Source: Scyliorhinus canicula
Taxonomy: Eukaryota
Assembly: GCF_902713615.1 (NCBI RefSeq)
Contig: NC_052152.1
Coordinates: forward strand, 149,594,815-149,658,814
Reading direction: 5' to 3'
Length of the DNA stretch: 64,000 nt
The notes beneath the pieces are model-generated. The model was not told the DNA's origin. It ran no database searches and saw only the letters and a list, made by a program, of their open reading frames with translations. The position numbers and the translations under genes are program-made. Positions 1 to 60,676 of the stretch are shown here, one piece after another (position 1 is the first letter of the stretch; every line of letters begins with the position of its first letter).

Positions 1-2757
1 GTATAATAGATTGCCATAAAACGAGAGGTAGAATTGTACCTGATTGACTTTTACACTAAAACTGTGAACTCATAATGGGTCTGGTGATGATTTAGCTGAT
101 CCAAGTATTTTAAATGAATGAAGTTGACCGAATAAGATTGTTTCAGTAATTTTTTACAGGCCTCAGCTGCCCTTTGATACTCAGTGCTGTATATTGTAAC
201 TTTAACAGAAACTACCTCCTGATTGTGGGCAAGCTTCTTCACTTTTGCGATATTGAACAGACATGCTATTTGAAAATGGGATTCAGACATCTGGATCCAG
301 ATTTTCATGGAGTCAGGCTGAGTGGGGTGGTTCTTGCAAAAAGCAGGTTCGGCTTGATTCAAGGATTCCCACCCCCATTCCCATTTCTGGCGATTTTAAC
401 CAGTGTGGGATAAGGGGCTGTTAGTGATCCTGCACAGAGCACTCTCACTCTTGATGGCTCTATTATGGGGTTGGGCACTTCAACCCCCTTCCTGCAATGT
501 TAATGGAGCTGTGCCCATCCTGTAGGTAGACATGATTCACAGCATCTTAGAGGATTTGTTAACCACAGGGGAAATGAAAACAAAAACACCATTCAACGTT
601 CACTTTGAAATGCATTGTCCCTCTTACAGTTTCATAAAGCCGTCAAATAATCAAAATCATTCATATTACCAATGTCAAAAAGCTGGTATCCACATCACAC
701 CTCTTAATCTTGTGTAAATAAACTTACAGGCAATGCATAAGACCCTCAATGAAAGATCTGGCTATTACAAGGTAATAAATATGTAATTCCAACTCTCCTC
801 TGAAACAATGTAAACATTCCCAGTGAGTCCATCTGAAAAACTATTCTGTTTTAACTGCATCTGTGAAAATATGTCACAGATGACCTTGTTACGAAGCTTG
901 GCAGTGCTCCAACAACAAGCAATCCACTTAACTTTCAACAGTCTATCTATATCCGGTTATAGAGTAGAGGGATAGATTTGTTTGATTGACATATTTATTA
1001 TATTTCATACTCTGTGATCTTGGAATTAGTTATTCCTTCTTTTTTTATGGTTTTCCAATGCCTATGTGTATTTATTTAACCAAAATTAAGAGGTATAATA
1101 TAGAGAGTAACATTTTGCCATTGATATTATGAATGGTTGTGATTGATTGATATTTTTTAAAGTTGTAAACCGAGCAGTAGTGTTAACAATAGAATTTCAA
1201 AGCTTCCTTGGTTATGTCAGTTTCTTGAGCATTTTGAAGACTTGCCAGGCTTGCCAATGATTCTTCAGGTGCTGGACATCACGGAGCCTGAGGAAGCATG
1301 GAGAACATGAAGGGAGAATGGGAGATATGAGGAGGAATGAGGGCATAGAGGGGCATAACAGAAATAAAAGGCCATGGAGGAAGCTGGAGGGGCATTGGGG
1401 TGGATGGAGGTTGAGGGGCCGGAGAGTTTAGGGCTTGAGGACCTGACATTCAGTGTTATAACTGGACCGATGCTCCACTGAATGGAGGTGGCCAATCCAG
1501 TCTTTGGTCCTGTCGCTGCAGTCCCATCCCACTGGCTCCACAAAGGAAATTTCAACACTTACCATTCAGGATTTCTTACATCTGCAGACCAGCTTTTAAT
1601 GAGTGCTCATGCACCATCTGCCCTGAAAGCAGAAGGACTTGACAAGTTTACGTAGAACTGATAATACCATAGCTTCAGAATTAACCAGGAATCATTCTGG
1701 CAAGTTTATGTGCAATCAATCCTTATGTTCCCTCCTTTGCTGACACATTGACTGGCATATGCATTTGTTCAATGTATCCTTTGCCATTTGCCTTAACTCC
1801 CTCATGCAATATGGTACTTGTTAATCTTTCCTCACTGATTAAAATACGGAGATTATTTCAACTGAGGCAGAGAGGGCTAAGAAAATATTTAATTGTTTTT
1901 TTCAATTATGAGGGATTCTGTTGGCGTGTTATAACAAGACAACGAAAGGAAAGGCAGGCAAAGACTTTGTTCACCTAGCCCAGCAATCGAGCTCAATGCA
2001 TTTCTATTGACAATGAATCCTATTTGTTGGCAAGAACCAGTTGAGTTCCTTCGGAAACCCATTAAGATTTCTTCTTTCACCGCCCATGCAGGTAATCTGT
2101 TTGACTCATTATCAACTCTTTAGGAGAAAAAAATTCTCCTGTGCTTCCAATTTTAATTTGTTGTCTTAATACTTGATCTTAAATTCTATACAGGGCAGAA
2201 ATTATTATTTGGGTTCAACTTACTTTGAACACCTTTATCAGTTCCCATCTTGATTTTTATCCTCTCAAGAAAGTAAAATCTCGTGTCAACAATTTCTTTA
2301 GTTTATGTTGAAGATCTACTTTTGCCAGGTGTTTGTCACAAGATGCGTATTTTTGACTTGCCTTAGCAATTTTTTTTTTCGGTCTTGCATCTTTTTTATA
2401 ACATCCTTTTGGACTCAGGAGAAAGCATTAACCCTTTCTGTAATTTATTTCTGTCCCTGCTGCATAAAGGCGCTTCTGAGAAGATTGGTTACGCTCACCA
2501 TAAATCATGTTCCCTGACTTTCTGCAGCACCTCGTTAACAACCCTGATCTTCCTTTACCGAGTAGGCTTTGCAGAACATTGCGCTGTTAAAAGCCATCCA
2601 TTATTTAAAAGGTTTGGCTGGTTAGAACTTTTAAATTATTGGCATGCATTAATTGATCTTAACATTCCATTCAACAATGCATTGCCCAGTATTTGAGTGT
2701 ACAGTATAAGATTGCTCCGAAGAAAACAGGATAATCAGGGATTAACAAGTCTGATTT

Positions 2758-2993
2758 ATTTTATTTTATTTTTTTCTTAAATTTAGTGTGCCCAATTCAT
2801 TTTGTCCAATTAAGGGGCAATTTAGCATGACCAATCCATCTGTCCTGCACATCTTTGGGTTGTGGCGGCGAAAACCCACGCAAACACGGGGAGAATGTGT
2901 AAACTCCATACGGACAGTGACCCAAAGTCGGGATGAAACCTGGGACCTCGGCGCCGTAAGGCTGCAGGGCGAACCCACTGCGCCACCATGCTT
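2758..2993 (-). mobile_element. tRNA-derived HE1/V-SINE-like SINE (short-tail type)
   Basis: Shares the core GGTCACTGTCCGTGTGGAGTTTGCACATTCTCCCCGTG...AAATTGCCCCTTAATTGG with many other copies; flanked by the 13-bp direct repeat ACAAGTCTGATTT (2745, 2994). Confidence 0.85.
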
Positions 2994-3983
2994 ACAAGTC
3001 TGATTTTGTTATTTCATTTATCATATATAAGTGTTTCTTGGTTCAATCTCAATGCTAAGACTACCAGTCATGCTCCCAATAGTTTCAATGAGGTTATGCA
3101 AAAGAATAAATGGACCTTCAGTCACACCAGTGTCTGTATTTCAATAATATGCCATATTTAGAACATTGGGGATACAGGATGCCTTTATCCTGTTTTAACT
3201 CAACTAAAGGTTCACCTTAACCAAATATGCTTGTCCAATCTTCTTCTATCCCTCTCCACATGCACTAACTACATAGCTGAATGAGAAGAATGATCTCCCT
3301 GCTTGCTGTTCCTGTCATGCTGATGCGATTGATGGAGGTCACCTTCGAAGATGCCGAAGTCATTCCTTCGATAACCAGCTGTGCTACTCACTGAGAACTA
3401 CGTCCTCTGTTTACACATCATTACGGTTAGCTGTTTTGAAGTTGCAGCATTCTATACCCTGATTAACCAGTTGACTTTATCATAACAAATCTAACCGATG
3501 TTTTCATCTCCTCAATGTGACTCATCCAGGACAGAGTTAGTCATTTTCTCCAATGAACCAATCTCAACAGATGTATAAAACCATTAATAGATGATAAAAA
3601 GCTGATTAAAATAAAAGGAGCAAATTAAAGGCAAGAGTAGACGTATTAAAGTTCTTCAATAATTTCTTTACAGCATTTTTTATTCATGTGTATTTCTGTT
3701 GGAGAATTTGGTTGCTATTCTCATAATTCTGAAATATCTCCACTGGTGGAGGTGGTGCTGAGTTGAAATGTATTGATCCCAATAGGCATTGGCGAGGAGA
3801 AATAAATGAGCTTGAAAAAGGCACTTACAATTTGACTGCATAAAACTCCCAGCTGATTAGCGATTGATTGCAGAATTAATGATCTACACAGGACAAACTA
3901 TTACAGATGGAATCAACATCCCTGAATTGATTCTCGTCTGATAGGAAGCCATCTTAACCAAAATAAATGCAGTTAGAAACTAT

Positions 3984-12038: not shown

Positions 12039-12044
12039 TGATCA

Positions 12045-12249
12045 TTTTGTTTTTTAAATTTAGAGTATCCAATTAATTTCCAATTAAGGGGCAATTTAGC
12101 ATGGCCAATCCACTTAGCCTGCACATCTTTGGGCTGTGGGGGTGAAACCCATGCAAACACGGGGCGAATGTGCAAACTCCACATGGACAGTGATCCAGGG
12201 CCGGGATCGAACCTGGCAGGGCTAACCCACTGCTCATCAGTGCTGCCCT
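12045..12249 (-). mobile_element. HE1-like SINE (short-tail type)
   Basis: Core and head match the other copies. Confidence 0.85.
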
Positions 12250-12734: not shown

Positions 12735-12987
12735 ACAAAATAGTGCAGATGCTGGGAATCTGAAATAAAATCAGAATATGCTGGATAAACTCAGCAGGAT
12801 TGGCAGCATCTGTAGAGAGAGGAGCAGAGCTAATATTTTGGATCTAAATGATCCATCAACAGGACTACAGAACTCTTTCCACAGAGCAGTTCTGCTGGAG
12901 GATCATTTAGATCTGAAACATTAACTCTGTGTCTCGATACAGATGGTGCCAGACCTCCTGAGTTTATCCAGCATCTTCTGCTTTTGC
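12735..12987. repeat. Penelope-derived palindrome (two inverted terminal arms)
   Basis: GCTGGATAAACTCAG...GATCTAAATGATCC pairs with GGATCATTTAGATC...CTGAGTTTATCCAGC; the arm matches the terminus of the Penelope remnant at ~30590-30680. Confidence 0.7.
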
Positions 12988-13010
12988 AACAAATTGATCC
13001 CCCTCGTAGA

Positions 13011-13240
13011 TTTTTTTTTAATAAATTTAGATTACCCAATTATTTTTTCCAATTAAGGGGCAATTTAGCATGGCCAATCCACCTACTCTACACATTTTTG
13101 GGTTGTGGGGGCGAAACCCACGCAGACACGGGGAGAATGTGCAAACTCCACACGGACAGTGACCCAGAGCCGGGATCGAACCTGGGACCTCAGCGCCGTG
13201 AGGCGGTTGTGCTAACCACTAGGCCACCGTGCTGCCCCCC
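13011..13240 (-). mobile_element. HE1-like SINE (short-tail type)
   Basis: Near-consensus copy flanked by the direct repeat CCCCCTCGTAGATTTT. Confidence 0.9.
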
Positions 13241-13402
13241 CCCCCCTCGTAGATTTTAACACCCGAGCCAGGAGGGTGTAATTCTCTGGAAGGTGTGATA
13301 GTTAAGGTATGTGTAGTGAAAGAAAACTCCAGTAGAGTCCTCCTCGAACAAAACGTCTCGAAAAATACCTTGTCATAACCAACAGCCCATTTTGCCTGTG
13401 GG

Positions 13403-13530
13403 ACATAAGAACATAAGAACTAGGAGCAGAAGTAGACCATCTAGATCTTTAAGCCTGCTCCGCCATTCAATGAGATCATGGCTGATCTTTTGTGGACTCA
13501 GCTCTACTTTCCTGCCCGAACACCATAACC
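13403..13530 (-). mobile_element. CR1 LINE extreme 3' end
   Basis: (CATAAGAA)n tail plus GCTCCGCCATTCAATGAGATCATGGCTGAT, homologous to 56722-56800. Confidence 0.75.
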
Positions 13531-14464
13531 AGTCAATGATGGACATGTCCCACACCAAGGTGGAGTCGCCAGGACTGGCAGCGCAAGATGACTGAAAGGC
13601 CTCCGGAGCTCATTCCACCTGCCCCTCTGTCCCATGGAGTCACCCAGTGCCCATGGGCACCATCAAGGAGGAGGAAGCACTGGAGGAAAACCCTCAGCTG
13701 CTATCAAGAAGACAACGGAAGTCTCCAGTTCTCCAGTTCTTCAGAATCCCCCGCGCCTGACACTGGCACATGTCAAGAGCACCGGACATAACAATGGCGA
13801 TGCCAGTGACATCAATAAGTCATCCAGGGCCCCCCTGGCTCCAGGCTCTTCAAAGGACATCCACCAACGGCATCAAAGGCCACAGGGTGCGGAAGGCAGC
13901 AAGTTGCCGCCACCTCTGATGTGCACCCTGGGGACACACCTAGATGTAGCAGTGGACCATGAAAGAGCAAGGAGAGATATGAGCACTGAGGGGACACTGG
14001 TGAGGGCACTATCTCTAGCTCGGGTGAATGGAAATCTTTCACAGTAAAATGTTCACGATTAAAACATGTCACACCTCATACTCCTGTAGTCTCTAATAAC
14101 ACTAATCTTCACTGTGGGCCTGCCCTCACCCCTTCTTCCATGTTTCCCTGCCCCTGGCATAGTGGTCCATGATCAAATGTCCCCGATGCGGACCCCGTTC
14201 AGAGGATGATGTGAGGTGAGCGCGCTGTCAACAGAAAGATGGGAGTCAGACTTGAGCAGAAACTGAAAAGCACTAGAGCTTTCCTTACAGCAAGTTATCA
14301 TCACTCTCCTGCCTTGTGTGCTGACCTGCTGACTCTTGGACGGTGGTACAGGGTGGTCAAGGTGAGGGCATTGTGATGGGGGTGCAGGGAAGTGAGAGAT
14401 TGGTGGGGAGGAGGGAAATTGGTAAGGGGGATTGGGTGGTTACGCTGACGGATGCAGCTTGTCC

Positions 14465-15500
14465 TATGAAAATCTAGAGATGATGAAAGCATCTCTGGCC
14501 CTCCTAGCATGACGGACCCTTGACACCACCTATCTTCCATTCTCCAGCTCCTCCTCAGCCTCATTCTCCAGCACCTCCTTGCCTGCCTCCTCCTCCTCAG
14601 CTGAGGCCCCATGTCCCTCCTCCTGCAGCATGTCACTCTACTGCTGTGCCAAGTTGTGAAGGGAACAGACGACTACTACAAAGTAGGAGACCCTGTGGGA
14701 GGTGCACCCCAGGGCACCATGAGAATGGGCCAGGCATCAGAACCGCTGTTTCAGCAGTCCGATGCACTGCTCAATGACAGCACCAGTGGTAAAGTGGGCC
14801 TTACCATGACAGATCTCAGCTTCAGGATCAGGCCTCCACACCAGTGTCATCAGTCATGAACTCAGCGAGTATCCATTGCCCCCACGAGCCAACCCCACAT
14901 CCTAGGCTGGTCCTTGAAGACATCAGGGATGTCCGAGTGCCCCAGGATGTAGCCATCATACATGATCCCTGGAGTAGAACCCCTTCCTGTTGATAAAAGG
15001 CATTACCTGATTCCCCTAGGTGCACAGAATGACAGGAATGCCATCAATCACCCCCTGGTTGCAGGGCATCCCGCGATGGCAACAAACCCTGCGACCCAGG
15101 CATTGTGGTGAGCCTGGTCCAGCTTGAAGGTGACATAGTTGGAAGCCTGGGCAGAAAGAGCATCCATCACCTCCTGAATGCACCTGTGGGCTGTAGATTG
15201 TGTTATACCACACATATCCCTGCTCGAGCCCTGGAATGAACCATTGCCATAAATATTGAGGGCTGCAGTGAGCTGCATGGCCACCGGGATTTTGGTATCC
15301 TCCTCCTCCACCGAGTGCCAAATTGATGAGAACGTGGCACAGGTGCCACACTGTTTTTATGCTGAAACACAGTCTTCCGCACGATATGGTGTCCGTCAGT
15401 TCATTGAATGACCAACGATACTTGTACATCTTGCACCATTCCTGGCCTCCCCTTCTGAGTCCCTCCTTAGCCTAATGGATATCCAGGTCTTCAGGATGCG
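14465..15500 (-). pseudogene. Harbinger (HARBI1-like) DDE transposase, multiply disabled
   Basis: LTAALNIYGNGSFQ..SRDMCGITQSTAHRCIQEVMDAL; QGVIDG; FINRKGFYS; GWLVGGNGY; VIEQCIGLLKQRF*CL; CSLHNLA; acidic tail. Confidence 0.9.
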
Positions 15501-15899
15501 CGGCAGCCCTCTGCACATGAGGTGCCACCTCCAAGTCTGCGTTGTCACTGTTCCCTTCTCCAGTGTCTGCCCACCTCGTTTGCCACTAGCAGTGTGAGTG
15601 CAGCATCCGCGGGACCGATACCAGAAAACATTTTGATCTAGAACGAATTGGAGAGACCATCCAGGGGTACCGTGCTCAGGTTCCCTCCGCCGATCCGCAC
15701 ACTCACCCATTGGTCGTGAGGATATCCCAGTGCTGAAAACTTGCTCTTTCGTGTTTGATTGTTGGCAGCTGCGTCAATGGTGATGACGCTCCCAGAATTC
15801 AGGCGCACTGTTCAGGCATCAAAGTTTGCTTGACATGCAATGCACTAAACATCCTCCAGGCATGACACGTGTGCGCTCAGGGAAGCACTTGAGAGTTGA

Positions 15900-16644
15900 T
15901 TTTTTTTTTTAATGAAATGGTCAACACTAACAAAGATTTAAAAATCAACTAAGGAATATTCCACATATCACACTAACCATTAAACAACAAGGAAACGTCA
16001 CCGTTCCATATTGGTATCAATACAAAGTTATATCAGCTCATTATCACGAAAAAACAAATGCTTGGGTTCACCCCTCGCAAATTCCTCAACAGGAACAGGG
16101 ATAAGCCTGAGAATATGTTATCATGCCCAGATCTTTGTCATAAATATGATCTGTCCATCAATATGTGACTTGTTCCACATATCAGTGCCATTCTCCATCC
16201 AGGAGTCACAGCTGTGGAGGCCCTCCCACACGGCCCAATCTCACCGGAATCAAAATCCTGGCATCCACATATTCCACTGGCACCCAGGGTGCAGTTGAAC
16301 TTGACTTCCAGCGTGTTTAACACATGATGGCGTGTCAGTTATATGGCAGCACTCACCACACCAGCAACAAAAGCATCAGCAATCTGCGAAAGCATTTCTT
16401 CAAGGAGGTTGGTGGGTGGTCCATTTGGATCAATGTCATGCACCAGGGCCGCAGAGTTTTCTTGCTTCAAACTGGATTGCCTTCTGAACTCATACATCCC
16501 CCCTGAACTCGGTATTCCAGGACCAAGGTAACTCAGAAAAAAATTGTCCTTTCCGGCGACAAAAATGGAAGGAAACAGCAACAGCAGCCTCCAGACATCT
16601 ACAGCCACCAGCAGGACGAGTAAGCAGCAAACACAGCCAGCGGC
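15900..16644 (-). pseudogene. TAF12: Processed pseudogene of TFIID subunit 12 (histone-fold), with frameshifts and stops
   Basis: Spliced-together frames read GCMSSEGNPV*SKK / LVHDIDPN..LLEEMLSQIADAFVAGVVSAAI*LTRHHVLNTLEVK / VQLHPGCQWNMWMPGF / DSGEIGP...WRMALI, versus vertebrate TAF12 LVREVDPNEQLDEDVEEMLLQIADDFIESVVTAACQLARHRKSSTLEVKDVQLHLERQWNMWIPGF...RMALI. No introns; A-tract at 15900-15910. Confidence 0.9.
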
Positions 16645-17609
16645 TGTGAAGTGCTCTCACAACTAACAATAGCCTTGAGCAATGAATCTAGAGGCTGCTC
16701 ACAGTCAAATGGGGTGAAATTGCCTTTCAGCATAAAAGCCACAGCAGGGCCCTGTCTGGGAAGAGTTTGGTAGGACAGACAGGCAGCAGCTGTAGTTGCC
16801 CCTGTTACAGGGTGTCCACAATATTTAAACATGGTTTCGAAGACCTCGCAGACGCAAACTCCTCACCCCCCGGCCTAGGGGTGACTCCTGACCTGGAACG
16901 CCTCAGTGCCCTGAGCAAGCCCAAGCCCCCTGTGTGGGCTCGATCCCGTCCGAGCAATGGGCCAGCAGCAGCTTCTGTGGCCTTGAGCTGTATGCCAGAA
17001 AATGGAAATAGCTACTCACCTCATCACCGCCCCTCAGAGGCATCATGCCATCTTCGAGTTTTTGAAAAGGCGAATTAAATGATGCCTGCGTGACTTCTCA
17101 GTGGCCTGCCACGTAATTCGCGGGAGGTCACCGCATTCAACTTCAATCTCATTAATAACATTGAAATAAATGCAAATGAGAGTTGGGCCGGGTGAATCGT
17201 AAAATGGTTCATGCAAGTCCCGAATCTTGATTTTGCCTTCATGCACTATTCGCCTGGCTTGCCCGGATCCGAGCCAGGCCCAATGCGGTCGCTAAATCGC
17301 GCCCTGAGTGTTAAAGATTTATCGCTTTAAATACACACACTCTCTCCAGCATTGGCCACTTAATAATGATTAAGAACAAGAACGGCAGCAAATGTCTCTT
17401 CCCTAACTCCACGACACTGAGACCAATTGCATTTCCTCTTGAGCAACTCCAACTGAGATTAATTCACTGCACAGACTGAAACTACCTCATAGTTCCAAAA
17501 CAAATTAACTCAACGTGCAGCCTCTCAATGCAAGTAGCTGATGAAAATGGCACCAGACGTAATATTTCATTTTCCCTCAGAAAATTCACGGCCACTTTAA
17601 TGTCTTAGT

Positions 17610-18235
17610 GGGATTCAAAAGGCACTAGGTTAGAATGCTGTCAAGTGCCATTATGAACCAAAATCTGACACTGATGCACATAAGTAGGTATTAGGTCAGA
17701 TAACCAAAAGCTGATTCCAGGCTGAAAGCTTTAATGAACATGTAAAAAGAGGAAAGAATGGGAGAGAGGTGGAAAGGTTTTAGTGAGCAAATTCCAGAGC
17801 TTAGGGCCAAGGCCGCTGAAGACACGGCCACTATTAGTGGACTGATTAAAATTGCGACTACTCAAGATGCCAGAATTTCCAGAGTGCAGATATATTGGAG
17901 CGTTGTAAGGTTGGGCGGGAAAATTACAGAACGATGAAGGCATGGAAGGTTTTGAAAACAAAGTTGATTTTAGTATTTCATGAGTGTTTTAAGATTGAGT
18001 CACTTCTTCATTGAGATTCGATATAGGTCAGTGAGCATAGGAAAGATGTGAAGCGAGACTTGTTGCAAGTTAAGACACATTTTAAAAGGGTAGAACCAGG
18101 GAGGGAGCCAAACTGTGTACTGGAATAGCCAAGCCTGATTGATGACAAAAACATGGATGAGGATTTCAGCAGTGTGTTAGGGAATGTTACTGAGATGGAA
18201 ATAGTGACAGTGTGGATATGTGGTACAAACTTCAA
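17610..18235 (-). mobile_element. L2 LINE 3' fragments, old
   Basis: GRVFSGLGPKLWNLL (L2 C-terminal W-N motif) and RLGYSS...GSLP. Confidence 0.6.
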
Positions 18236-18489
18236 AAATTAACCCAAAGTTCCAAACAGGCTGCTGCAACTTCAGACAATCTCCAAAGAGACAGGTGGAG
18301 ACAGCAGTTGGAAGTTAGAGGGCACAATTCAACCAAGACATTTCTATGATCCGGTCTCAGGCACATTTCACGGAGTGTCTCTTGGCGGCCGCAGAGGCAC
18401 TTTGCCATTTTCCTGGCCTTAGGGAATTTCTCTCTGCTGAACCACACATACATGATTTCCTGTTTGCGTGCTGAAAGACTCCTCTCGGA

Positions 18490-20320
18490 CAAAGTCCCGT
18501 CATCACATTGAGGATACCCTCCATCATGTTGTGTGGCACTACCACCGTGCTAAATGGGATAGACTTTGAGAAGATCTAGTAACTCAAGACTGAGCATCCA
18601 TGATGCGCTGTGAGCCATTAGCAGCAACAGAATTTTATTTAACCACAATCTGCAACCTCGTTGCCCAGCATATGCCCCACTCTACCATTACCACCAAGCC
18701 AGGGGATCAACGCTGGTTCAATGAACAGCATGCCAGGAGCAACATCAGGCATACCAAAAAATGAGGTTTCAACCTAGTGAAGCTACAACACAGGTCTACT
18801 TGTGTGCCAAGCAGCATAAGTAGCAAGTAATAGCGAACCCACAATAACCGCATCAGATCTAAGCTCTGCAGTCCTACCACATCCACATCCAGCCGTGAAT
18901 GTGGTGGACAATTAAATAACTCGTTGGAGGAGGAAACTCCACAAATACCCCCATCCTCAATGATAGAGGAGCCCAGCACATATGTGCAAAGGACAAGGCT
19001 GAGGCGTTTGCAACAATCATCAGCCAGAAGTGCGAAGTGGACAATCCACCTGTGTCCTCAGGAATTCCCCAGCATCACAGATGTCAGTTTTCAGCCAATA
19101 CGGTTCACTGCACATGGTATTATAAAATGGCTGAAGGCATTGGATACTGTAAAGACTATGGGCCCTGATAATATCCGGCATTAGTACTGAACACTTGTAC
19201 TCCAGAGCTTGCTGCACCCCTAGCCGAGCTGTTTCAGTACAGCTACAACACTGGCATCTACCCGGCAATGTGGAAAATTGTCTAGGCATGAACTGTACAC
19301 ACGAAACAGGACTAAACCAACCCTGTCAATTACCGCCCTATCAGTCTACTCTCCATCATCAGCAAAGTGATGGAGGAGTCATCAACAGTGCTATGAAACG
19401 GCACTTACTTAGCAATAACCTGCTCATGGATACTCAGTTTGGGTTCCACCAGAGTCACTCAGCTTCTGACCTAATTACAGCCTAGGTTCAAACATGGACA
19501 AAAGAGCTGAATGCCAGAGGTGAGGTGAGAGTGAATGCCTTTGAATTTAAGGCAACATTTGACCAGGTATGGCATTCAGGTGCTCAGGCAAAACTGGAGT
19601 CAATGGGAATCAGGGGGAAAACTCTCCGCTAGTTGGAGTCATACCTGGCACTAAAGAAGATGGTTGTGGTAGTTGGCGGTTAATCATTTATCAGAAATTG
19701 AATTGGACTAGCCATATTAATACTGTGGTTAGCAGGGCAGGCCAAAAGCTCAGAATCCTAAGGTGAGTAACTCACCTCATGTTTCCCCAAAGCCTGAACA
19801 CCATCTGCAAGGCACAAGTCAGGAGTGTAATGGAATACCCTCCACTTGCCTGGATGAGTGCAGCTCCAACAACGCTCAAGAAGCTCAACACCATCCATGA
19901 CAACGCAATCTACTTGATTGCTCCACTTTCACAAACACTCAAACCTTCCACCAATAGTGGCAGCCATGTGTACCATCTACAAGATGCACTGCAGTGACTT
20001 GCTAAGGTTCCTTCGACAGCACCTCCAAGCCTAGGACCACTACCATCTCGAAGAAAAAGAGCAGCAGAGGTTTGGGAACCCCACCATCTGGAGGTTCCCC
20101 TCCAAGTCACTCACCACATAGACTTGGAAATATATCGCCCTTCCTTCACTGTCACTGAGGAAAAATCCTGGCACTCCCTCCCTAAGAGCACAGTGGGTGT
20201 ACCTAAATCTCAGGGACTGCAGCGGTTCAAGAAGGCAACTCACCACTAAATCCTGAAGGGCAACTAGGGATGGGCAATAAATGCTGGCCTAACCAGTGAT
20301 GCCCACATCCTGTAAATTAA
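18490..20320 (+). mobile_element. CR1/L2-clade LINE, degenerate, with internal deletion
   Basis: LKALDTVKTMGPDNI, NYRPISLLSIISKVM, QFGF, KLNWTSHIN; same family as 10530-11560. Confidence 0.88.
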
Positions 20321-20439
20321 TTAATTGTTTTTAAAAATAATCAGGGTGCCCGAATCTTCCCCCACTTTTAGGGTCTGCCTTGTTTTTGACCACGCCTCTT
20401 CCCCCCAAGCTTGGGAAGCCTGTAGGAAACCCCCCTCGC

Positions 20440-20868
20440 CCTCCTTCCACCTGATAAGGTCAAATCACTGGCAATTCCAACCTGGCACCTGGGCAACCTG
20501 GCACTGCCAGGGTGCCAGGCTGCCAGGCTGCCAGTGCAAAGGAACCCAGGTATAAGAGGAAGAGCCAGGGTATTGCCATGTCCTGTCCCCAACCACCCGG
20601 GGTTTCTAATGACCTGGGAAACTCCCTCCGGTTCCATCACGATTGTACTACAGTTGTATGGACCTGTAATAAACAGCGACCTGGTGAGGACTCCGAGGCA
20701 CAGCAGTTAGTTTCCCGGCACCGGGAGAATTCTGCAAACCACATACTTAGGCTCATTTGAATATGCTGATCTGGGTCATATCCAGTGAGGGTGAGATCCA
20801 AATCACAATGTCTCGTGAAGTTCCGTTGGACACCAAGTTGGGTGCGACAAGGCAGCTGAATCGCACCC
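20440..20868. mobile_element. Harbinger-type MITE remnant
   Basis: GGCACTGCCAGGGTGCCAG motifs and TIR-like CTGAATCGCACCC end. Confidence 0.5.
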
Positions 20869-20939
20869 AAAGTTTCTGATGGGGATTGAAAACAATAATT
20901 GCTAATTGCTGTTTCCAAAATACTTAAAGTGAGGAAATC

Positions 20940-21400
20940 AATTACTGGATGTTGGTCAAGCAGTCTGACAGTAAAGAGACGCTGGAGGGCTGAAGAATAG
21001 TGGATGTGCAGTAGAGTTGCGTGTCATCAGTCCACATGTGGAAACTGTTGCGGTGTTTTTGGAGGATGTTGCCAAGGGTCAGCATGTAGATGAACACTGT
21101 GGGTGAGGCATGCACAAGGATAGATCTTGGGGGATTCCTGAAGTAATGGTACAAGAGAGGGAAGAGAAGCCATTGCAGGTGGTTCCGCACCTACGACTGG
21201 TTAGACGGGAGAGAAACCAAACCATATCCAACCATATAACAGTTAAGAGGTGTTGAACAAAATGCTGTTATTAAAAGTGTGAAAGGTCACAAACAGGTTG
21301 AGAAGCCTGAGGTGATCTTCGTGGCAGCCAAATAGGATCTCATTTGTGACATTGGTAATAGTCGTTTGGTTCTGTGACAAGGTTGTAATGTGACTGGATG
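20940..21400 (-). mobile_element. L2 LINE RT fragment
   Basis: YMLTLGNILQKHRNSFHMWTDDTQLY matches the L2 HMYADDTQLY motif. Confidence 0.75.
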
Positions 21401-22074
21401 CTTTCATTATTATATTTGCATTATTTTAAATTCTATAACTCATTTCATTTAAATATTATTACTTCCATTATTGTTATGGGCTGCCAGCATTTTCCCTGTT
21501 GTAAACCAGTGTGTTATTCTCGAGTAATAAAAATGGCAATGAAATAAAGTGCAGTCGGAGTTAGTGTTTGACCATCCTCTTGCAATATAAATAGCAACTG
21601 GTGAACCGTTCGCCAATGGCATTCATATTTTGAGATTGTAAAGTGTTTTACAGTAGTGCTGAAGTAGATTTTAGCTGTACAGTGCATAGTGAATGTTTTA
21701 TTTTGTGGAATATTTTCTCCTATTTAAATGTTCAAATATCCTATCTGACATAGAAGAATGAAAACAAGACCAAATTATTTGCAGTTTATTTAATTGAATT
21801 AGTCCAAATAGGTACTTATTTTAACTTTTATTTTGTTACCGCAGTGAAAATATGTGAAACCTCAAATGGTGACTTTAAATATCTTAGGGCAGTGTTTTTC
21901 ACAGGTTTTTTTCCCAGGACCCACATTTACCAATCGACCAACCTTCACGACCCACACCAGCCGGCCTTCATGACCCACAGCGGCTGACCTTCACAACCGA
22001 CCCCAACTGACCTTCATGATACTCCATTACTAATTACCTTTAATGTGGCAGGTGAACCTGCTTGGTCCTCACAA

Positions 22075-23296: not shown

Positions 23297-24151
23297 TTTG
23301 TTTTAACTTTGAAACTCTATTTTCAATACCCGATTTTTCCAAGTTTATGGTTTTTTATTGCTGAAAATTAAAGCAGTTTCAGTTGAACATTTGCATTCTT
23401 ACATTTACAAACAAACTTTGTTTCGAATAAAATCCGGATTTTGTTTTTGAAATTTAAACAAGTACAGACAGAAGTTTTTATTATTGTTTCTACTTTACAA
23501 ACTATGACTATAGACGAGATGGGGTAACTTGTCAAGCACACGCAATGCTACAATATTTCTTACTGATTCCACTGTATTGCAGTATCCATACATCCAAGTC
23601 ACCTCCCTCTCCGTTCTCACAAAAAGCACTTACTTCTTGGTTTCCAGAGTGTGGTGACACAAAGTGATGACTCTAGGTTTCCTCCAGTGTCAGCATGTGT
23701 CAGTCGTATTGACTGGCCTCATTTGATTGGTATTCTTCGCTGACAAACTTGGCCTGGTTTCCCTCTTACTGTCCAATAGCTGTTACTGCCATCACATTCA
23801 TCCACCCCGATCACGGGCTGCTGACCACTTCCCGACCCACACTTCAAGCCATGGGAGCACAAGTGGATGTTGTGCCGGCTGTTGAGTAGCTTCACCACAG
23901 AGCCGTAGGTCACATACTGCCGATCGGTGACAGGGGAGGAGCCGAGCAACGCTTGGAGGGCAAGCACCAGGGCTGAGCTCAGAGCAGGGGCCGTCACCAT
24001 GAGCATTGCACGGGCCCACCTGGCTGCCCATCAGCCTCTGTCCCACCAATCTCCCCCCGCCCCTCCCCACATGCATGGTGACCAGCACACAGCCCAGCTT
24101 CACGTCACCCTACCCCTCGAACGTCGCAGCCAATTGCGGCTGCCCGCAACA
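23297..24151 (-). pseudogene. SDF2: Processed pseudogene of stromal cell-derived factor 2 (MIR-domain ER protein; SDF2L1 not fully excluded)
   Basis: Signal peptide then VTYGSVVKLLNSRHNIHLCSH..GSGSGQQPV.GV...SNSYWTVRGK...PIK*GQSIRLTH..TGGNL/SHHFVSPHSGNQEVSAF.ENGEG.DLDVW. Intronless; stop plus frameshift; AT-rich 3'UTR with AATAAA (~23354-23359); candidate TSD GGCATTCT/GTCATTCT. Confidence 0.9.
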
Positions 24152-35184: not shown

Positions 35185-35970
35185 AAACATAGGAACATAC
35201 AAACATATGAATTAGGAGCAGGATTCGGTCATTCGGCCCCTGAGTCTACTCCCCCATTCAATAGGATTATGGCTGATTTCATTGTAACCTCAGCTCCTCA
35301 TTCCCACCTACCCCCAATAACCTTTCACCTCCTTGCTTAGCAAAATTCTATCATGCTCTGCCTTAGAAATATAAAAAGACTCTACTGCCAGTGCTCTTTG
35401 AGGAAGAGTTTCAAAGGCTCACAACCCTCTGAGCCTAGCTTGCCCAACCTTTCTTCATAAAACAACCTACCCAGCCCAGGTATTCGTCTGATAACTCTCC
35501 TCTCAGCATGCTTCCGACATATTTACATTCTTCCCTGAATAAAGAGACCAATTCTGTTCACAGTACTCCAGGTATGATCTCACCACTGCCCGATATAATC
35601 ACAACCTCCCTACTTTTGTCTTCAATTCCCCCCGCATTAAACAATAACCATGTATTTGCTTTCCATAGGGCAGCACGGTGGCGCAGTGGGTTAGCCCTGC
35701 TGCCTTCACGGCGCTGAGGTCGCAGTTTCGATTCCGGCTCAGGGTCACTGTCCGTGTGGAGTTTGCACATTCTCCGCGTGTCTGTTTGGGTTTCACCCCC
35801 ACAACCCAAAGATGTGTAGGGTAGGTGGATTGGCCATGCTAAATTGCCCCTTAATTGGAAAAAGTAAATTGGGTACTGTAAATTTTTAAAAAATCAATTA
35901 GCTTTCCTAAATACTTGCTGTACCAGCGTACTACACTTTAGCGATTCATGCACGAGCGCAGTCAGATTTC
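35185..35970 (-). mobile_element. CR1 LINE 3' fragments
   Basis: 3' tail AACATAGGAACATA...GGCTGAT and RT C-terminal remnants (GIEDKSREV). Confidence 0.65.
35668..35892 (+). mobile_element. HE1-like SINE (short-tail type)
   Basis: GGGCAGCACGGTGGCGCAGTGG head and core. Confidence 0.88.
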
Positions 35971-52500: not shown

Positions 52501-52607
52501 CGCAATAATGTCATTGGACCTGAGCTTCAATCACTGGAACATGTTCTATCTGTGAAAATAGAAGATATTTTCACTACTGGATGGGATCTGACCAGCAAAC
52601 ATTATTT

Positions 52608-52831
52608 TATTAAATAAATTTAGAATGCCAAATTCATTTTTTCCAATTAAGGGGCAATTTAGTGTTGCCAATCCATCTACCCTGCACATCTTGGGGTTGT
52701 GGGGGCGAATCCCATGCAAACATGGGAAGAATGTGCAAACTCCACACGGGCAGTGACCCAGAGCCGGGATCGAACCTGGGACACTGGCGCCATGAGGCAG
52801 GTGTGCTAACCACTGTGCCACCGTGCTGCCC
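52608..52831 (-). mobile_element. HE1-like SINE (short-tail type)
   Basis: Near-consensus; direct repeat TCTGACCAGCAA on both sides. Confidence 0.88.
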
Positions 52832-56185: not shown

Positions 56186-56721
56186 GATTTTTGATAATGT
56201 GATCTAACTGTGGATTCTCAACTGTAAGGAGAAACAAACATTCTTCTGCTTTCCGTTAAATGAGAAAGGCATATGGGAACTGAATGGAATCATGAGATTT
56301 GGACTCGTGCTCGTGTGAGGATAAATATTAGCATAAACTGTTTTTGGTGTTATGGAGCATGATTCAGCGTTCACATTGCACCCAGCATGGATCCGGGTGC
56401 ATCAGGTGAATATCGGGAGAGGGCAACATCGAGATTTGATCCAGGCATGAACCATTTTGCGATTCACAAATAACCTTTCCGATGGTGAGTTCCGTATCAT
56501 GCCCCAAAATGACAGGAATATCATTAACCCTCAGTTGCAATCATTTGAATCTCATTAACAAAATTGAAGTTGAATGCAGCGGACTCCAGGGGATAACCTA
56601 ACTACCCAGCGGGAAGTTATGCGGGTGTCATTTAGTACTCCATTTCAAAAATAGGAACCTGGCGCAGTAGCTACTGAGAGGAAGTGAGTAGCCATTTCCA
56701 TTTTCCGACATGCAGTTTAAG

Positions 56722-59056
56722 ACCATAAGACCATAAGACATAGGAGTGGAAGTAAGGCCATTCGGCCCATCGAGTCCACTCCGCCATTCAATCATGGCTG
56801 ATGGGCATTTCAACTCCACCTACCAGCATTCTCCCCGTAGCCCTTAATTCCTCGCGACATCAAGAATTTATCTATCTCTGACTTGAAGCCATTTAGCGTC
56901 CCGGCCTCCACTGCATTCCGCGGCAATGAATTCCACAGGCCCACCACTCTCTGGCTGGAGAAATGTCTCCACATTTCTGTTCTGAATTTACCCCCTCTAA
57001 TTCTAAGGCTGTGCCCACGGGTCCTCGTCTCCTCGCCTAACGGAAACAGTTTCTTTGCGTCCACCCTTTCTAAGCCATGTATTATCTTGTAAGTTTCTAT
57101 TAGATCTCCCCTTAACCTTCTAAACTCCAAAGAATACAATCCCAGGATCCTCAGCCGTTCATCATATGTTAGACCTGCCATTCCAGGGATCATCCGTGTG
57201 AATCTCCGCTGGACACGCTCCAGTGCCAGTATGTCCTTCCTGAGATGTGGGGCCCAAAACTGGACACAGTACTCCAAATGGGGCCTAACCAGAGCCTTAT
57301 AAAGGCTCAGTAGCACATCGCTGCTTTTATATTCCAACCCTCTTGAGATAAATGACAACATTGCATTCGCTTTCTTAATCACAGATTCAACCTGCATGTT
57401 TATCTTTAGGGAATCCTCGACTAGCACTCCCAGATCCCCTTGTACTTTGGCTTTATGAATTTTCTCACCGTTTAGAAAGTAGTCTATGCTTGGATTCTTT
57501 TTTCCAAAGTGCAAGACCTCACATTTTCTCACGTTGAATTGCATCAGCCATTTCCTGCACCACTCTCCCAAACTGTCTAGATCCTTCTGCAGCCTCCCCA
57601 CTTCCTCAGCACTACCTGCCTGACCACCTAACTTCGTATCATCGGCAAACTTCGCTAGTATGCCCCCAGTCCCTTCATCCAGATCATTAATATATATGGT
57701 GAACAGCTGCGGCCCCAATACTGAACCCTGTGGGACACCACTGGTCACCGGCTGCCATTCCGAAAAATAACCTTTTATCCCAACTCTCTGCCTTCTGTCA
57801 GACAGCCAATCCTCAACCCATGCCAGTAGCTCACCTCGAACACCATGGGCCCTCACCTTACTCAGCAGCCTCCTGTGTGGCACCTTATCAAAGGCCTTTT
57901 GGAAATCCAGATAGACCACATCCACTGGGTTTCCCTGGTCTAACCTACTTGTCACCTCCTCAAAGAATTCTAACAGGTTCGTCAGGCACGACCTCCCCTT
58001 ACTAAATCCATGTTGACTTGTTCTAATCCGACCCTGCTCTTCTAAGAATTTAGAAATCTCATCCTTAACGATCGATTCTAGAATTTTACCAACGACCAAG
58101 GTTAGGCTAATTGGCCTATAATTTTCCATCTTTTGTCTTGATCCTTTCTTGAACAAGGGGGTTACAACAGTGATCTTCCAATTGTCTGGGACTTTCCCTG
58201 ACTCCAGTGATTTATGAAAGATCTCAACCAACGCTTCCACTATTTCTTCAGCCACCTCCCTCAGAACTCTAGGATGTAGCCCATCGGGGCCAGGAGATTT
58301 GTCAATTTTAAGACCTTTTAGCTTTTTTAGCACCATCTCTTTTGTAATGGCAACCATACTCAACTCAGCCCCCTGACCCTCTATAATTTTTGGGATATTA
58401 CTCATGTCTTCCACTGTGAAGACAGACGCAAAGTACTTATTAAGTTCTCCAGCCATTTCCTCGTCTCCCATCACTAGCCTTCCAGAATCAGTTTGAATTG
58501 GCCCAATGTCTACTTTGGCCTGTCGTTTGTTTCTTATGTATTGAAAGAAACTTTTACTATCATTTCTTATATTACTGGCTAGCCTGCCTTCATATTTGAT
58601 CCTCTCCTTCCTTATTTGTCTCTTTGTTAACCTCTGTTTGTTTTTGTAGCCTTCCCAATCTTCTGATTTCCAAGTGCTTTTGGCCACTTTATAGGATCTC
58701 TCTTTTTCTTTGATACATTTCCTGACCTCCTTTGTCAGCCATGGCTGTCTAATCCCTCCCCGGATAATCTTTCTTTTCTTAGGGATGAACCTCTGTACAG
58801 TGTCCTCAATTATGCATACAAACTCCTGCCATTTTTGCTCTGCTGTCTTCCCCACTAGGGTCTGCTTCCAGTCGATTTTCGCCAGTTCCTCTCTCATGCC
58901 CTCGTAATTACCTTTATTTAACTGTAACACCATTACATCCGATTTTGCCTTCTCTCTTTCAAACTGCAGACTGAACTCAACCATATTATGATCGCTGCTT
59001 CCTAAGTGTTCCCTTACTTTAAGATCTTTTATAAAGTCTGGTTCATTACATAGCAC
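56722..59056 (-). mobile_element. Young 5'-truncated CR1 LINE
   Basis: (TCTTATGG)n 3' tail; TAAG at both junctions; uninterrupted ORF2. Confidence 0.95.
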
Positions 59057-59059
59057 TAA
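56810..59059 (-). CDS. CR1 ORF2, partial (end of APE domain plus complete reverse transcriptase); no native start codon
   Basis: About 750 codons without a stop: HLGSSDHN, KSPGPDG, NYRPISLT, LDFQKAFD, GVPQGSVLGP, KFADD, WNSLP. The ORF-track start at 59065 lies in flanking DNA. Confidence 0.93.
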   Translation of the reverse strand, partial: LVLCNEPDFIKDLKVREHLGSSDHNMVEFSLQFEREKAKSDVMVLQLNKGNYEGMREELAKIDWKQTLVGKTAEQKWQEFVCIIEDTVQRFIPKKRKIIRGGIRQPWLTKEVRKCIKEKERSYKVAKSTWKSEDWEGYKNKQRLTKRQIRKERIKYEGRLASNIRNDSKSFFQYIRNKRQAKVDIGPIQTDSGRLVMGDEEMAGELNKYFASVFTVEDMSNIPKIIEGQGAELSMVAITKEMVLKKLKGLKIDKSPGPDGLHPRVLREVAEEIVEALVEIFHKSLESGKVPDNWKITVVTPLFKKGSRQKMENYRPISLTLVVGKILESIVKDEISKFLEEQGRIRTSQHGFSKGRSCLTNLLEFFEEVTSRLDQGNPVDVVYLDFQKAFDKVPHRRLLSKVRAHGVRGELLAWVEDWLSDRRQRVGIKGYFSEWQPVTSGVPQGSVLGPQLFTIYINDLDEGTGGILAKFADDTKLGGQAGSAEEVGRLQKDLDSLGEWCRKWLMQFNVRKCEVLHFGKKNPSIDYFLNGEKIHKAKVQGDLGVLVEDSLKINMQVESVIKKANAMLSFISRGLEYKSSDVLLSLYKALVRPHLEYCVQFWAPHLRKDILALERVQRRFTRMIPGMAGLTYDERLRILGLYSLEFRRLRGDLIETYKIIHGLERVDAKKLFPLGEETRTRGHSLRIRGGKFRTEMWRHFSSQRVVGLWNSLPRNAVEAGTLNGFKSEIDKFLMSRGIKGYGENAGRWS

Positions 59060-59699
59060 GGGCACTGGAATTGCTGCTCAGTGCTCGGGGGTGGGCGGGA
59101 GGAAGGATGAATGGGGGGATGGGTGTGGTATGGGGAGGGGGGACCCCTCAGGGGCTAGGGTTGCTCAGGGGGCTGAAGAGTTTCAAGTCAGGGGCCACCC
59201 CTGAGCCGGGGTGGGGCTGAGCGGCTTTGCGTCTGTGAGGCTTGCAAACCATCTTTACATATTGTGGAGACCCATAACAGGTGCAACCACAGCTGAAGCC
59301 TGCTTGTCCTATCAAACGCTTCCAAAACAGAATTCTGCTGCAGCTTCTAAACTGAAATTCAATTGTCACCCCTTTTGACTCTGAGCAGCCTCTAGCTTCA
59401 TAGCTGAATGCGGTTTCAAATGATGAATTAGTCTTGTTAATTGTGAGAGCATCTCACACTCCTCAATACTCAAGTGCCTCCTCGAGGGCACACATGCCAT
59501 GTCTCAGAGGATTATTAGTCCATGCATGTCAAGCAAACTTTAATGCCTGAACAGTGTGCCTGAACTCTAGAAGCATCAGCACCATAAAGGCAGCTGCCAA
59601 CAAGTAAACACTAAAGAGCAGGTTTTCACCTCTGTGGATCTTCACGTGACCAAATAATATGTGTGTGGATGAGCGGAGGGCAGCTGAGCACGTTATCCA

Positions 59700-59905
59700 T
59701 TTTTAAAAATAAATTTAGAGTACCCAATTCATTTTTCTAATTAAGGGGCAATTTAGCGTGGCCAAACCAACTAGCCTGCACATCTTTGGGTTGTGGGGGC
59801 GAAACCCACGCAGTCACGGGAGAATGTGAAAACTCCACACAGACAGTGACCCAGAGCCGGGATCGAACCTGGTGCAGTGCTACCCTCTGTGCCACCGTGT
59901 TGCCC
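59700..59905 (-). mobile_element. HE1-like SINE (short-tail type)
   Basis: Core and head match the family. Confidence 0.85.
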
Positions 59906-60059: not shown

Positions 60060-60676
60060 TCAGTGACTACTCCCTTCTTGAACATTCCCCATGATTTCCA
60101 GGACCCGTTACTCATAGGGGGTGAGGACGTGAATCCCTGGATTCCTCCCCTCCCCCCCTCCCCCCCCCCATTTTGGCTCTTTCTCAATTATTATTTGTTA
60201 TCTGCTCCTGTGGGGACAAAGAGAAGGCATCGTGAGATGCATGCTTGATGGTTTAGTGGGGTCTATAGAAGGTGGCACCACACCTGGACATGAAGGGGTT
60301 GTGCTGGTGGGTGGCAGGGGTTTCTGAGGAACAAGTGCGAGGATCAGATGTGGGAAGGGTGTGAGGTGTCAGCCAGTCGACTGGGGTGGAGTAGGGAGGT
60401 TGGGATTTAGGGGGTGGCAGGTGCAAGTGATGCCAGGAGGACGGTGGTAACTTCCCCTTGTTGGAGGTCATTAGTCTTCTTCTGACATTCAACAGCGGTC
60501 TTCCTGGTCATACTGCCCATACTAACAACTACTACCTCCCAGGTGACATAGCTAACCCTGCTGCTGATGCTCCCACCCACTTGGAGGAACTGAATACACT
60601 GCTTCTCATCCACAGCGTTGAGTCGCCTTGTATGGTTAGCATCCCCAAAACGAAAACCAGGTCTGTATGCTGCCAT
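60060..60676 (-). pseudogene. Harbinger ORF2 Myb/SANT exon 1 and exon 2, decayed
   Basis: MAAYRPGFRFGDA..RRLNAVDE...TWEVV..SMGSMTRKTAVECQKKTNDL; acceptor TCTCTTTGTCCCCACAG followed by EQITNNN*ERAKMGG...IHVLTPYE*RVLEIMG. Confidence 0.72.

What the first reader, a model, noticed from the sequence alone, without database searches (positions are those of the whole stretch)
15900..16644. TAF12 retrocopy inside a Harbinger transposon, with the empty site visible in a sibling element 43 kb away
Seen: a frameshifted, intronless TAF12 histone-fold sequence ending in an A-tract, split across several short ORFs. It is flanked by CACTTGAGAGTTGA and TGTGAAGTGCTCTCAC, upstream of the transposase. The sibling element reads CACTTGAGTATTGA-GGAG-TGTGAGATGCTCTCAC (reverse complement of ~59443-59477) with no insert, which fixes the boundaries of the 745-bp cargo. 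No clear TSD. Known: TIR transposons can carry host-gene cargo (Pack-MULE/Pack-TIR type). Inference: this is either a one-off retroposition into a resident element or a Harbinger subfamily that spread a TFIID-subunit copy.
Basis: partly seen in the sequence, partly recalled or inferred. Interest (0 to 1): 0.8.

Follow-up and report, generated by a model that had tools for sequence, protein, structure and literature searches.

The report
TAF12 mRNA cargo in shark Harbinger
A dead, intron-free copy of the host gene TAF12 sits inside an old cut-and-paste (Harbinger) transposon in a catshark genome. It is not a one-off accident, because the same TAF12 piece occurs in dozens to probably hundreds of copies in two shark species, some with the same transposon flanks.

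Summary
Window 15900-16644 (sense on the minus strand) is a decayed, intron-free TAF12 fragment. It covers human residues ~41-161, a ~250-nt 3'UTR and an A11 tail, preceded by a ~120-nt leader with no TAF12 match. It lies upstream of, and co-oriented with, a frameshifted PIF/Harbinger transposase. A 79%-identical relative at 59698-59151 has only GGAG at that exact spot. No target-site duplication is present.

Public shark DNA contigs laid at >=80% likeness put 46-91 (species A) and 64-120 (species B) distinct contigs on insert positions. Summed depth there is several-fold above the transposase and about 1000-fold above the unique flank. Several paralogous contigs keep flank and insert colinear, and a few show the empty slot.

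Best reading (~0.6): one cDNA capture in a Harbinger lineage, then amplification together with Harbinger flanks. This copy is dead and not transcribed in the RNA run laid. Transposition as the amplifying mechanism is not proven: no TIRs, no TSD, and no outer flanks of other copies were seen.

The scan flagged TAF12-in-Harbinger on five other pieces of this genome, and a hAT/HNRNPU analogue.

The parts
15900..15910 (-). Poly(A) tail of the captured mRNA (A11, read as T11 on the + strand). It abuts the Harbinger flank directly.
15911..16158 (-). 3'UTR-like part of the cargo (~248 nt). There is no canonical AATAAA, only TTTAAA about 27 nt before the tail.
   Evidence: The ancestral stop is placed at 16161-16159 by counting from the residue 131 match to the 161-residue chain length.
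16159..16521 (-). TAF12 coding-derived part, equivalent to human residues ~41-161 including the histone fold. It is contiguous, with no room for introns. It is disabled by TAA at 16341-16339, a frame change near 16300, and an extra T at 16255-16252.
16522..16644 (-). Leader of ~120 nt with no TAF12 match, ending in T7-CTGAG (16543-16532). It is as abundant in DNA as the TAF12 part but nearly absent from RNA reads. Its origin is unknown.
15665..15899 (.). Harbinger-side flank between the cargo and the transposase. It is shared with the relative at 59698-59463 (79%).
16645..17305 (.). Flank on the other side, running to the element's end. Homology with the relative ends at ~17298, and read depth falls to the unique level from 17308.
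14530..15590 (-). PIF/Harbinger-type transposase relic with many frameshifts, co-oriented with and downstream of the cargo.
   Evidence: frame-by-frame reading. (nearest Atlas clusters are DUF8040/Plant_tran/DDE_Tnp_4, score 0.95). Pfam gives only a weak HTH_Tnp_4 hit.
59151..59698 (-). Relative without the insert. The empty site is GGAG at 59462-59459, between TTGA and TGTGAG.
56361..56725 (-). Continuation of the relative beyond a LINE insertion. It matches 16978-17298 at 69-71%.
56726..59150 (-). 5'-truncated LINE that splits the relative. It has an open 751-aa reverse-transcriptase ORF (56810-59065) and a short-tandem-repeat 3' tail, not a poly(A) tail.

Best explanation
A spliced, polyadenylated TAF12 transcript fragment was copied as cDNA into the non-coding region upstream of the transposase of one PIF/Harbinger lineage. 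The fragment ran from about residue 41 to the poly(A) tail and carried a ~120-nt leader of unknown origin. It went in the same orientation as the transposase, replaced a 4-nt GGAG, and left no target-site duplication. This happened after that lineage split from the 'empty' lineage seen at 59.4 kb.

The chimeric unit then multiplied together with its Harbinger flanks, to at least dozens and probably hundreds of copies. The simplest route is cut-and-paste transposition of full-length and shortened derivatives supplied with transposase in trans. Multiplication began before two catshark species diverged.

The cargo was already, or soon became, non-coding. The copy in this window is a dead, untranscribed relic at a locus shared with the second species.

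Shown: TAF12 identity, intron-free colinearity, the A-tail, the empty site, the multi-copy status, and colinear flank+insert in other copies.

Inferred: a single capture event, the cDNA route, and Harbinger transposition as the amplifier.
For: Identity and structure:
- Two colinear matches to human TAF12 in two frames.
- Residues 41-161 fit into 363 contiguous nt, followed by ~248 nt and A11 exactly at the indel boundary.
- Empty site at the same boundaries in the window relative and in public contigs: 15899->16645 with AAAG, 15856->16645/16647 in 4+2+4 contigs, and 15853->16645 with a diverged flank ending in GGAG.

Multi-copy status:
- Summed depth over the insert in X1 is 2600-3500. The transposase gives 70-900 and the unique flank ~0-1.
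- X9 gives 14000-22000 over the insert.
- Distinct contigs at insert positions number 46-91 (X1) and 64-120 (X9). Flank positions 15849 and 16681 carry similar numbers (74/101 and 60/76).
- There is no depth step at 16644/16645 (3379 vs 3834).

Paralogous contigs that keep flank and insert colinear:
- X25 15827->15915 plus 16052->16146 (depth 200.8).
- X25 15804->15960.
- X9 16616->16771.
- X9 15984->16649.

Non-coding spread: the extra T at 16252 is shared by 60-77% of family depth, so amplification went on after the frame was broken.

Age:
- Species B holds 22% of the insert's exact 31-mers.
- Species B also has 92-93.5% identical contigs over the transposase and over the element end plus unique flank (records 19, 20, 24).

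Independent leads: five unchecked first-stage notes on other pieces of this genome place TAF12 fragments in Harbinger-like elements, one 'beginning at the same CCTGGA word'. Here the match starts at CCTGGA, 16521-16516.
Against: - No TIRs and no TWA duplication could be found for the host element. Its left end is undefined.
- The high-depth block is only ~15640-16810. The element's right-terminal 300 nt and the transposase are 5-15 times less deep at >=80% likeness. So most copies may lack recognisable Harbinger ends, or the ends are simply too diverged to pass the filter.
- Summed contig depth is not a copy number.
- Only the best-supported joints and loose ends were printed, so the share of copies with identical junctions is unknown.
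- No outer flanks of other copies were seen.
- The empty lineage also adds depth on the flanks.
- The transposase call rests on reading and on language-model neighbours, not on a Pfam hit above threshold.
Confidence: 0.6

Rival explanations
1. The 745-nt unit is an independently retrotransposing poly(A) retroposon family derived from a TAF12 retrocopy. Members are copied by a LINE reverse transcriptase. One member landed in this resident Harbinger, and the flank abundance comes from the separate, abundant 'empty' Harbinger-derived family.
For: - The poly(A) tail sits exactly at one boundary.
- The unit is deeper than the transposase and the element terminus.
- Depth halves from the insert to the left flank, and dips in the bin that holds the left junction.
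- X1 contigs 95.5-97% identical to the insert hint at copying younger than the locus (records 4 and 7).
- An open LINE reverse-transcriptase ORF is present in the window.
Against: - No TSD.
- No depth step at the 16644/16645 boundary.
- Several paralogous contigs carry flank plus insert in the same order.
- No tRNA-like or Rfam head in the leader.
- The LINE in the window ends in a short tandem repeat rather than poly(A), so it is not an obvious partner.
- Three other first-stage notes place TAF12 inside Harbinger-like elements (unchecked), which is unlikely for random insertions.
Confidence: 0.17
2. The chimeric block (~15640-16810: flank, TAF12, flank) was amplified by tandem or segmental duplication, as satellite-like arrays, and not by any transposition.
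For: - The high-depth block has fairly sharp limits that do not coincide with the element's ends.
Against: - No head-to-tail joint (about 16806 back to about 15640) appears among the best-supported joints.
- The copy here is solitary within 64 kb.
- Dozens of diverged contig variants in two species fit dispersed old copies better than a homogenised array.
Confidence: 0.12
3. An ordinary one-off processed pseudogene nested in a dead transposon. The apparent multiplicity would be an artefact of laying contigs at 80% likeness, for example hits from the real TAF12 gene.
For: - Only one copy in the 64-kb window.
- The depth measure is not a copy number.
Against: - 46-120 distinct contigs per position share family-consensus letters that differ from this copy, including in the 3'UTR and in the non-TAF12 leader.
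- One gene's exons cannot give that.
- Exact 31-mers occur in a second species.
Confidence: 0.03

Closest known systems
Pack-TYPE transposons of plants (Pack-MULE, Pack-CACTA, Pack-Tourist; PMC8903248)
   Same: - A TIR-transposon family carries a host-gene fragment as internal cargo and multiplies it.
- The cargo decays and may be transcribed.
   Different: - The host is a vertebrate (shark).
- The cargo is clearly mRNA-derived (spliced, with 3'UTR and A-tail), not genomic DNA.
- This copy still has a transposase relic next to the cargo, whereas Pack elements are by definition non-autonomous.
- TIRs and TSD were not demonstrated here.
Turmoil-1 of C. elegans, a PIF/Harbinger element with transduplicated rsp-2 and cpg-3 fragments (PMC2572040)
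   Same: - An animal PIF/Harbinger-superfamily element that incorporated host coding sequence. The paper calls transduplication otherwise unknown in animals.
   Different: - Turmoil-1 carries its fragments inside its terminal inverted repeats.
- Here the cargo lies in an internal slot upstream of the transposase, has a poly(A) tail, and reaches far higher copy numbers.
Processed pseudogene nested in a transposable element
   Same: - Intron-free, polyadenylated, frameshifted copy of a housekeeping gene.
   Different: - No target-site duplication.
- A non-gene leader is attached.
- The unit is a multi-copy family sharing junctions, not a single insertion.
Helitron gene capture in vespertilionid bats (PMC4224331)
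   Same: - A vertebrate DNA transposon family that amplified host gene fragments to many copies.
   Different: - A different transposon class (rolling-circle).
- A different capture mechanism: read-through or DNA-level capture rather than a cDNA.

Membership tests
Processed (mRNA-derived) TAF12 retrocopy | Sequence homology to TAF12 / the TFIID 20-kDa histone fold | tested here: met
   PDB phmmer gives E=1.1e-5 (residues 41-99) and E=0.016 (residues 114-131), colinear, in two frames. Pfam PF03847 gives E=0.002 but is below the gathering score because the domain is split.
Processed (mRNA-derived) TAF12 retrocopy | No introns where the parent gene has them | tested here: inconclusive
   Residues 41-161 occupy 363 contiguous nt, so there is no room for an intron. 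That the shark parent gene has introns in this stretch rests on general knowledge of vertebrate TAF12. The parent gene was not available to the tools.
Processed (mRNA-derived) TAF12 retrocopy | 3'UTR followed by a poly(A) tail at the insert boundary | tested here: met
   About 248 nt after the inferred stop, then A11 at 15910-15900, directly abutting the flank that the empty relative shares.
Processed (mRNA-derived) TAF12 retrocopy | Target-site duplication of LINE-mediated retroposition | tested here: not met
   No direct repeat at the junctions. Four nt (GGAG) of the empty site are replaced instead.
PIF/Harbinger DNA transposon (host element) | DDE_Tnp_4-type transposase | tested here: inconclusive
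   The frame-by-frame reading shows the usual Harbinger blocks. The nearest Atlas clusters carry DUF8040, Plant_tran and DDE_Tnp_4 at score 0.95. Pfam on the pieces gives only HTH_Tnp_4 at E=0.07-0.08. Two protein searches found nothing.
PIF/Harbinger DNA transposon (host element) | Second gene encoding a Myb/SANT-like DNA-binding protein | tested here: not met
   No such ORF was recognised left of the transposase. The candidate next to the relative, 60410-60760(-), has no Pfam or Atlas support.
PIF/Harbinger DNA transposon (host element) | Terminal inverted repeats and a 3-bp TWA target duplication | tested here: not met
   No inverted repeat scored above shuffled controls. The right end is placed at ~17305 by homology and depth only; it is followed by TGA here and by TAA in the relative. 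The left end is not defined.
Pack-type / transduplicating TIR transposon | The same cargo with the same junctions at several loci with different outer flanks | tested here: inconclusive
   Multi-copy status and several paralogous contigs with colinear flank+insert were seen. Outer flanks and the share of copies with identical junctions could not be seen.
Pack-type / transduplicating TIR transposon | Non-autonomous (no transposase) | tested here: not met
   This copy carries a transposase relic 70-300 nt downstream of the cargo. The depth ratio suggests most other copies lack it.

The most novel reading that the evidence does not exclude
Catshark cut-and-paste transposons may have a recurrent, mechanistically specific way of taking up spliced host mRNAs as cDNA into a defined slot near one end, upstream of and co-oriented with the transposase. 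Candidates so far are Harbinger with TAF12, and hAT with SDF2 and HNRNPU. The elements would then amplify that cargo to hundreds or thousands of copies. That would be a vertebrate 'retro-Pack' system coupling reverse transcription to DNA transposition. A further possibility is that the TAF12 histone-fold cargo was, for a time, an expressed transposon-borne protein or regulatory RNA acting on TFIID/SAGA.
Probability: 0.12. Interest if true: 0.8.

Novelty: new member of a known kind. Interest (0 to 1): 0.5.

Why it matters
Amplification of host-gene fragments by DNA transposons is well documented in plants. It is rarely documented in animals, and hardly at all for Harbinger elements in vertebrates.

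This case has an unambiguous mRNA signature, a preserved empty site and a high copy number in two shark species. It would therefore give a clean system for asking how cDNA enters a cut-and-paste element.

It could also show whether hundreds of sense-oriented TAF12 fragments, some of them transcribed, affect the parent gene through small RNAs or competing transcripts.

In practice, these copies will mislead gene annotation (false TAF12 paralogues) and repeat libraries in elasmobranch genomes.

Tried and rejected
- **Protein relatives.** The word-index search with the TAF12 piece and with the transposase piece found no candidates. The exhaustive representative search with the 105-aa piece gave 0 hits at E<=0.001. 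So no shark TAF12 or paralogous ORFs could be fetched, and no divergence from the parent could be measured.
- **Third TAF12 piece.** 16138-16323(-) alone gives no TAF12 hit.
- **Pfam on transposase fragments.** Nothing above threshold.
- **Myb-like gene beside the relative.** Considered from reading 60410-60760(-), then dropped after Pfam and Atlas gave nothing.
- **TIR and TSD searches.** Tried around 13200-13700 vs 17200-17320, around the high-depth block edges, and for the relative's far end. All scores were within shuffled controls.
- **Rfam and tRNA scans of 12900-17600.** Nothing found.
- **Second copy in the window.** Neither the insert nor its leader recurs.
- **Run X25 as RNA evidence.** Rejected, because its depth tracks the DNA run at a near-constant 0.1-0.15 ratio across all bins. 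It is used only as a source of paralogous contigs.
- **RNA reads (X22) as coming from the true TAF12 mRNA.** Considered and judged unlikely. Some reads are ~96% identical to this decayed copy where the copy is very unlike canonical TAF12. So they come from other family members.
- **Literature.** No paper links TAF12 with Harbinger or shark transposons.
- **Earlier findings by sequence.** Blank.

Full report
**What is in the sequence**

Read on the minus strand, window 16644->15900 has four parts:
- a ~120-nt leader with no recognisable homology (16644-16522), ending in T7-CTGAG;
- a TAF12-derived stretch starting at CCTGGA (16521);
- about 248 nt of 3'UTR-like sequence;
- an A11 tail (15910-15900).

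The stop-free piece 16339-16608(-) matches human TAF12 residues 41-99 (phmmer against PDB sequences, E=1.1e-5). It also matches Pfam TFIID_20kDa, but below threshold (E=0.002). A piece in a second frame, 16253-16375(-), matches residues 114-131 of the same chain (E=0.016).

The two matches are colinear. Counting on to the chain's 161 residues puts the ancestral stop at 16161-16159. At that point the sequence still reads R-M-A-L-I, followed by a mutated tail (my reading).

Residues 41-161 therefore occupy 363 contiguous bases, which leaves no room for introns. The copy is disabled by a TAA (16341-16339), a frame change near 16300, and an extra T in the run 16255-16252.

**The empty site**

A relative on the opposite strand aligns at 79% to 15665-15899 and to 16672-16929. 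At the exact place of the insert it reads TTGA-GGAG-TGTGAG (59462-59459).

Its homology resumes beyond a 2.4-kb LINE insertion (56726-59150), at 56725-56361, which matches 16978-17298.

The left junction is exact. The right junction is uncertain by 4-7 nt. There is no target-site duplication. The poly(A) tail lies precisely at an indel boundary, which argues for insertion of a cDNA rather than deletion in the relative.

**The host**

Downstream of the cargo and in the same orientation (15590->14530, minus strand) lies a heavily frameshifted transposase. Its blocks read like PIF/Harbinger transposases. Its N-terminal piece has Atlas neighbours carrying DUF8040, Plant_tran and DDE_Tnp_4 at score 0.95. 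Pfam itself gives only a weak HTH_Tnp_4 hit.

The right end of the element is at about 17305. Homology with the relative stops there, and read depth falls to the unique level from 17308.

I could not find TIRs, a TWA duplication, a Myb-like second gene or the left end. 'Harbinger' therefore rests on the transposase relic and on adjacency.

The relative is not a full sibling element. It has no transposase and abuts a SINE at 59700.

I laid Logan contigs of two DNA runs (X1, the window's species; X9, a second species label), one doubtful 'RNA?' contig run (X25) and one true RNA raw-read run (X22). The target was 13300-18300 at >=80% likeness.

Summed word depth in X1:

| Region | Coordinates | Depth |
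|---|---|---|
| Transposase | 14469-15637 | 70-900 |
| Left flank | 15638-15971 | ~1300-1400 |
| Insert | 15972-16639 | 2600-3500 |
| Right flank | 16640-16806 | 3800 |
| Toward the terminus | 16807-17307 | 70-290 |
| Unique flank | 17308-17641 | ~0-1 |

X9 gives 14000-22000 over the insert.

Single-locus contigs in these runs have depth ~3-6 (X1) and ~9-10 (X9). The sums therefore correspond very roughly to hundreds or more copy-equivalents. The tool warns that this is not a copy number.

A sturdier count is the number of distinct contigs at insert positions: 46-91 in X1 and 64-120 in X9 (counting stops at 128). Most carry the same letter, different from this copy. This holds in the 3'UTR and the leader as well, so one gene's exons cannot explain it.

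**Are the Harbinger flanks co-amplified?**

Evidence that they are:
- Flank positions 15849 and 16681 carry similar contig numbers (74/101 and 60/76).
- There is no depth step at 16644/16645.
- Several contigs that cannot be this locus, because parts of them fall below 80% likeness, keep flank and insert in the same order:
  - X25 15827->15915 plus 16052->16146 (depth 200.8);
  - X25 15804->15960;
  - X9 16616->16771;
  - X9 15984->16649, a copy with most of the cargo deleted in place.
- Empty-slot contigs break at the same points as the window relative: 15856->16645/16647 in ten contigs, 15899->16645 with AAAG, and 15853->16645 with a diverged flank ending in GGAG.

The extra T at 16252 is absent from only 23-40% of family depth. 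Amplification therefore continued after the reading frame was broken, so the cargo spread as non-coding DNA.

Against a simple Harbinger-transposition model, the deep block is only ~15640-16810. The terminal 300 nt and the transposase are 5-15 times shallower. Those parts are also the least conserved between this element and its relative (69-71%), so many would fail the 80% filter.

Only the best-supported joints and loose ends were printed, and read laying allows a single call. The fraction of copies with identical junctions, and their outer flanks, therefore remain unknown.

**Age**

- X9 contigs match the transposase at 92-93% (records 19, 20).
- X9 record 24 matches the element end plus unique flank (17185-18289) at 93.5%. 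The element was therefore at this locus before the two species split.
- Species B runs hold 22% of the insert's exact 31-mers. That is what ~5% divergence leaves, and it is consistent with the insert being present there too. This is not proof.
- X1 contigs 95.5-97% identical to parts of the insert (records 4, 7) may be younger paralogues or chimeric contigs.

**Expression**

In the oligo-dT RNA run (X22), reads lie almost only on one strand. They cover about 15960-16480 at depth 14-25, against ~1 on the leader and the right flank.

All of these reads carry family-consensus letters. None is clean for this copy: the fewest other differences are 3-8 per 100 nt.

Some other member is therefore transcribed, and this copy is silent in that sample. 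The strand of the RNA depends on the library chemistry, which I do not know.

X25's profile follows the DNA run at a constant ratio, so I do not count it as RNA evidence.

**Interpretation**

The best reading (about 0.6) is a single cDNA capture into a Harbinger lineage, followed by amplification with Harbinger flanks. That makes it a vertebrate, mRNA-derived counterpart of plant Pack-type elements (PMC8903248) and of the C. elegans Harbinger-superfamily element Turmoil-1 (PMC2572040).

Rivals:
- an autonomous-looking poly(A) retroposon family that merely hit this element (0.17);
- tandem or segmental amplification of the chimeric block (0.12);
- a one-off pseudogene (0.03).

No Rfam family or tRNA-like head is present. 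The LINE in the window ends in a short tandem repeat rather than poly(A). Both points weigh slightly against the retroposon rival.

**Relation to earlier notes of the scan**

All of these are unchecked leads.

Five other first-stage notes on other pieces of this genome describe TAF12 fragments. Three place them in Harbinger-like elements, and one says the fragment begins 'at the same CCTGGA word'.

A follow-up report describes a hAT-like family carrying a spliced HNRNPU piece at hundreds to thousands of copies in two shark species.

The same window holds an SDF2 retrocopy flagged inside a hAT element. Its SDF2-like ORF at 23719-24006(-) is visible.

These notes fit the cargo model and hint at a wider pattern. 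I could not read those loci myself.

**Literature**

I found no paper on TAF12 in Harbinger or shark transposons.

Noticed in passing
window 56810-59065 (-): A 751-aa uninterrupted reverse-transcriptase ORF (Pfam RVT_1, E=1e-31) in a 5'-truncated LINE that splits the relative element. Its 3' end carries short tandem repeats (TCTTATGG-like), not poly(A). It may be a recently active LINE family.
   Followed up: partly
window 13300-13633: An extremely abundant repeat (summed contig depth 180,000-500,000) with many RNA reads on both strands and sharp loose-end points at 13451/13452 and 13487/13488. It lies immediately left of the Harbinger relic.
   Followed up: no
window 13010-13237, 12044-12216, 2769-2992, 35668-35893, 52601-52831, 59700-59889 and others: A ~230-bp SINE-like repeat present at least 9 times in 64 kb (84-91% identity). 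One copy abuts the left end of the relative element at 59700.
   Followed up: no
window 23719-24006 (-): The ORF reads like SDF2 (MIR-domain protein). Whether it is also multi-copy could not be tested.
   Followed up: partly
window 16254-16346: A 91-nt deletion variant of the TAF12 cargo (joint 16254->16346) is seen in contigs of three runs from both species. This suggests a deletion subfamily.
   Followed up: no
window 15960: RNA reads and one paralogous contig both break at 15960, about 50 nt before this copy's poly(A) tail. The transcribed member(s) apparently differ in structure, or use a different 3' end, from that point on.
   Followed up: no
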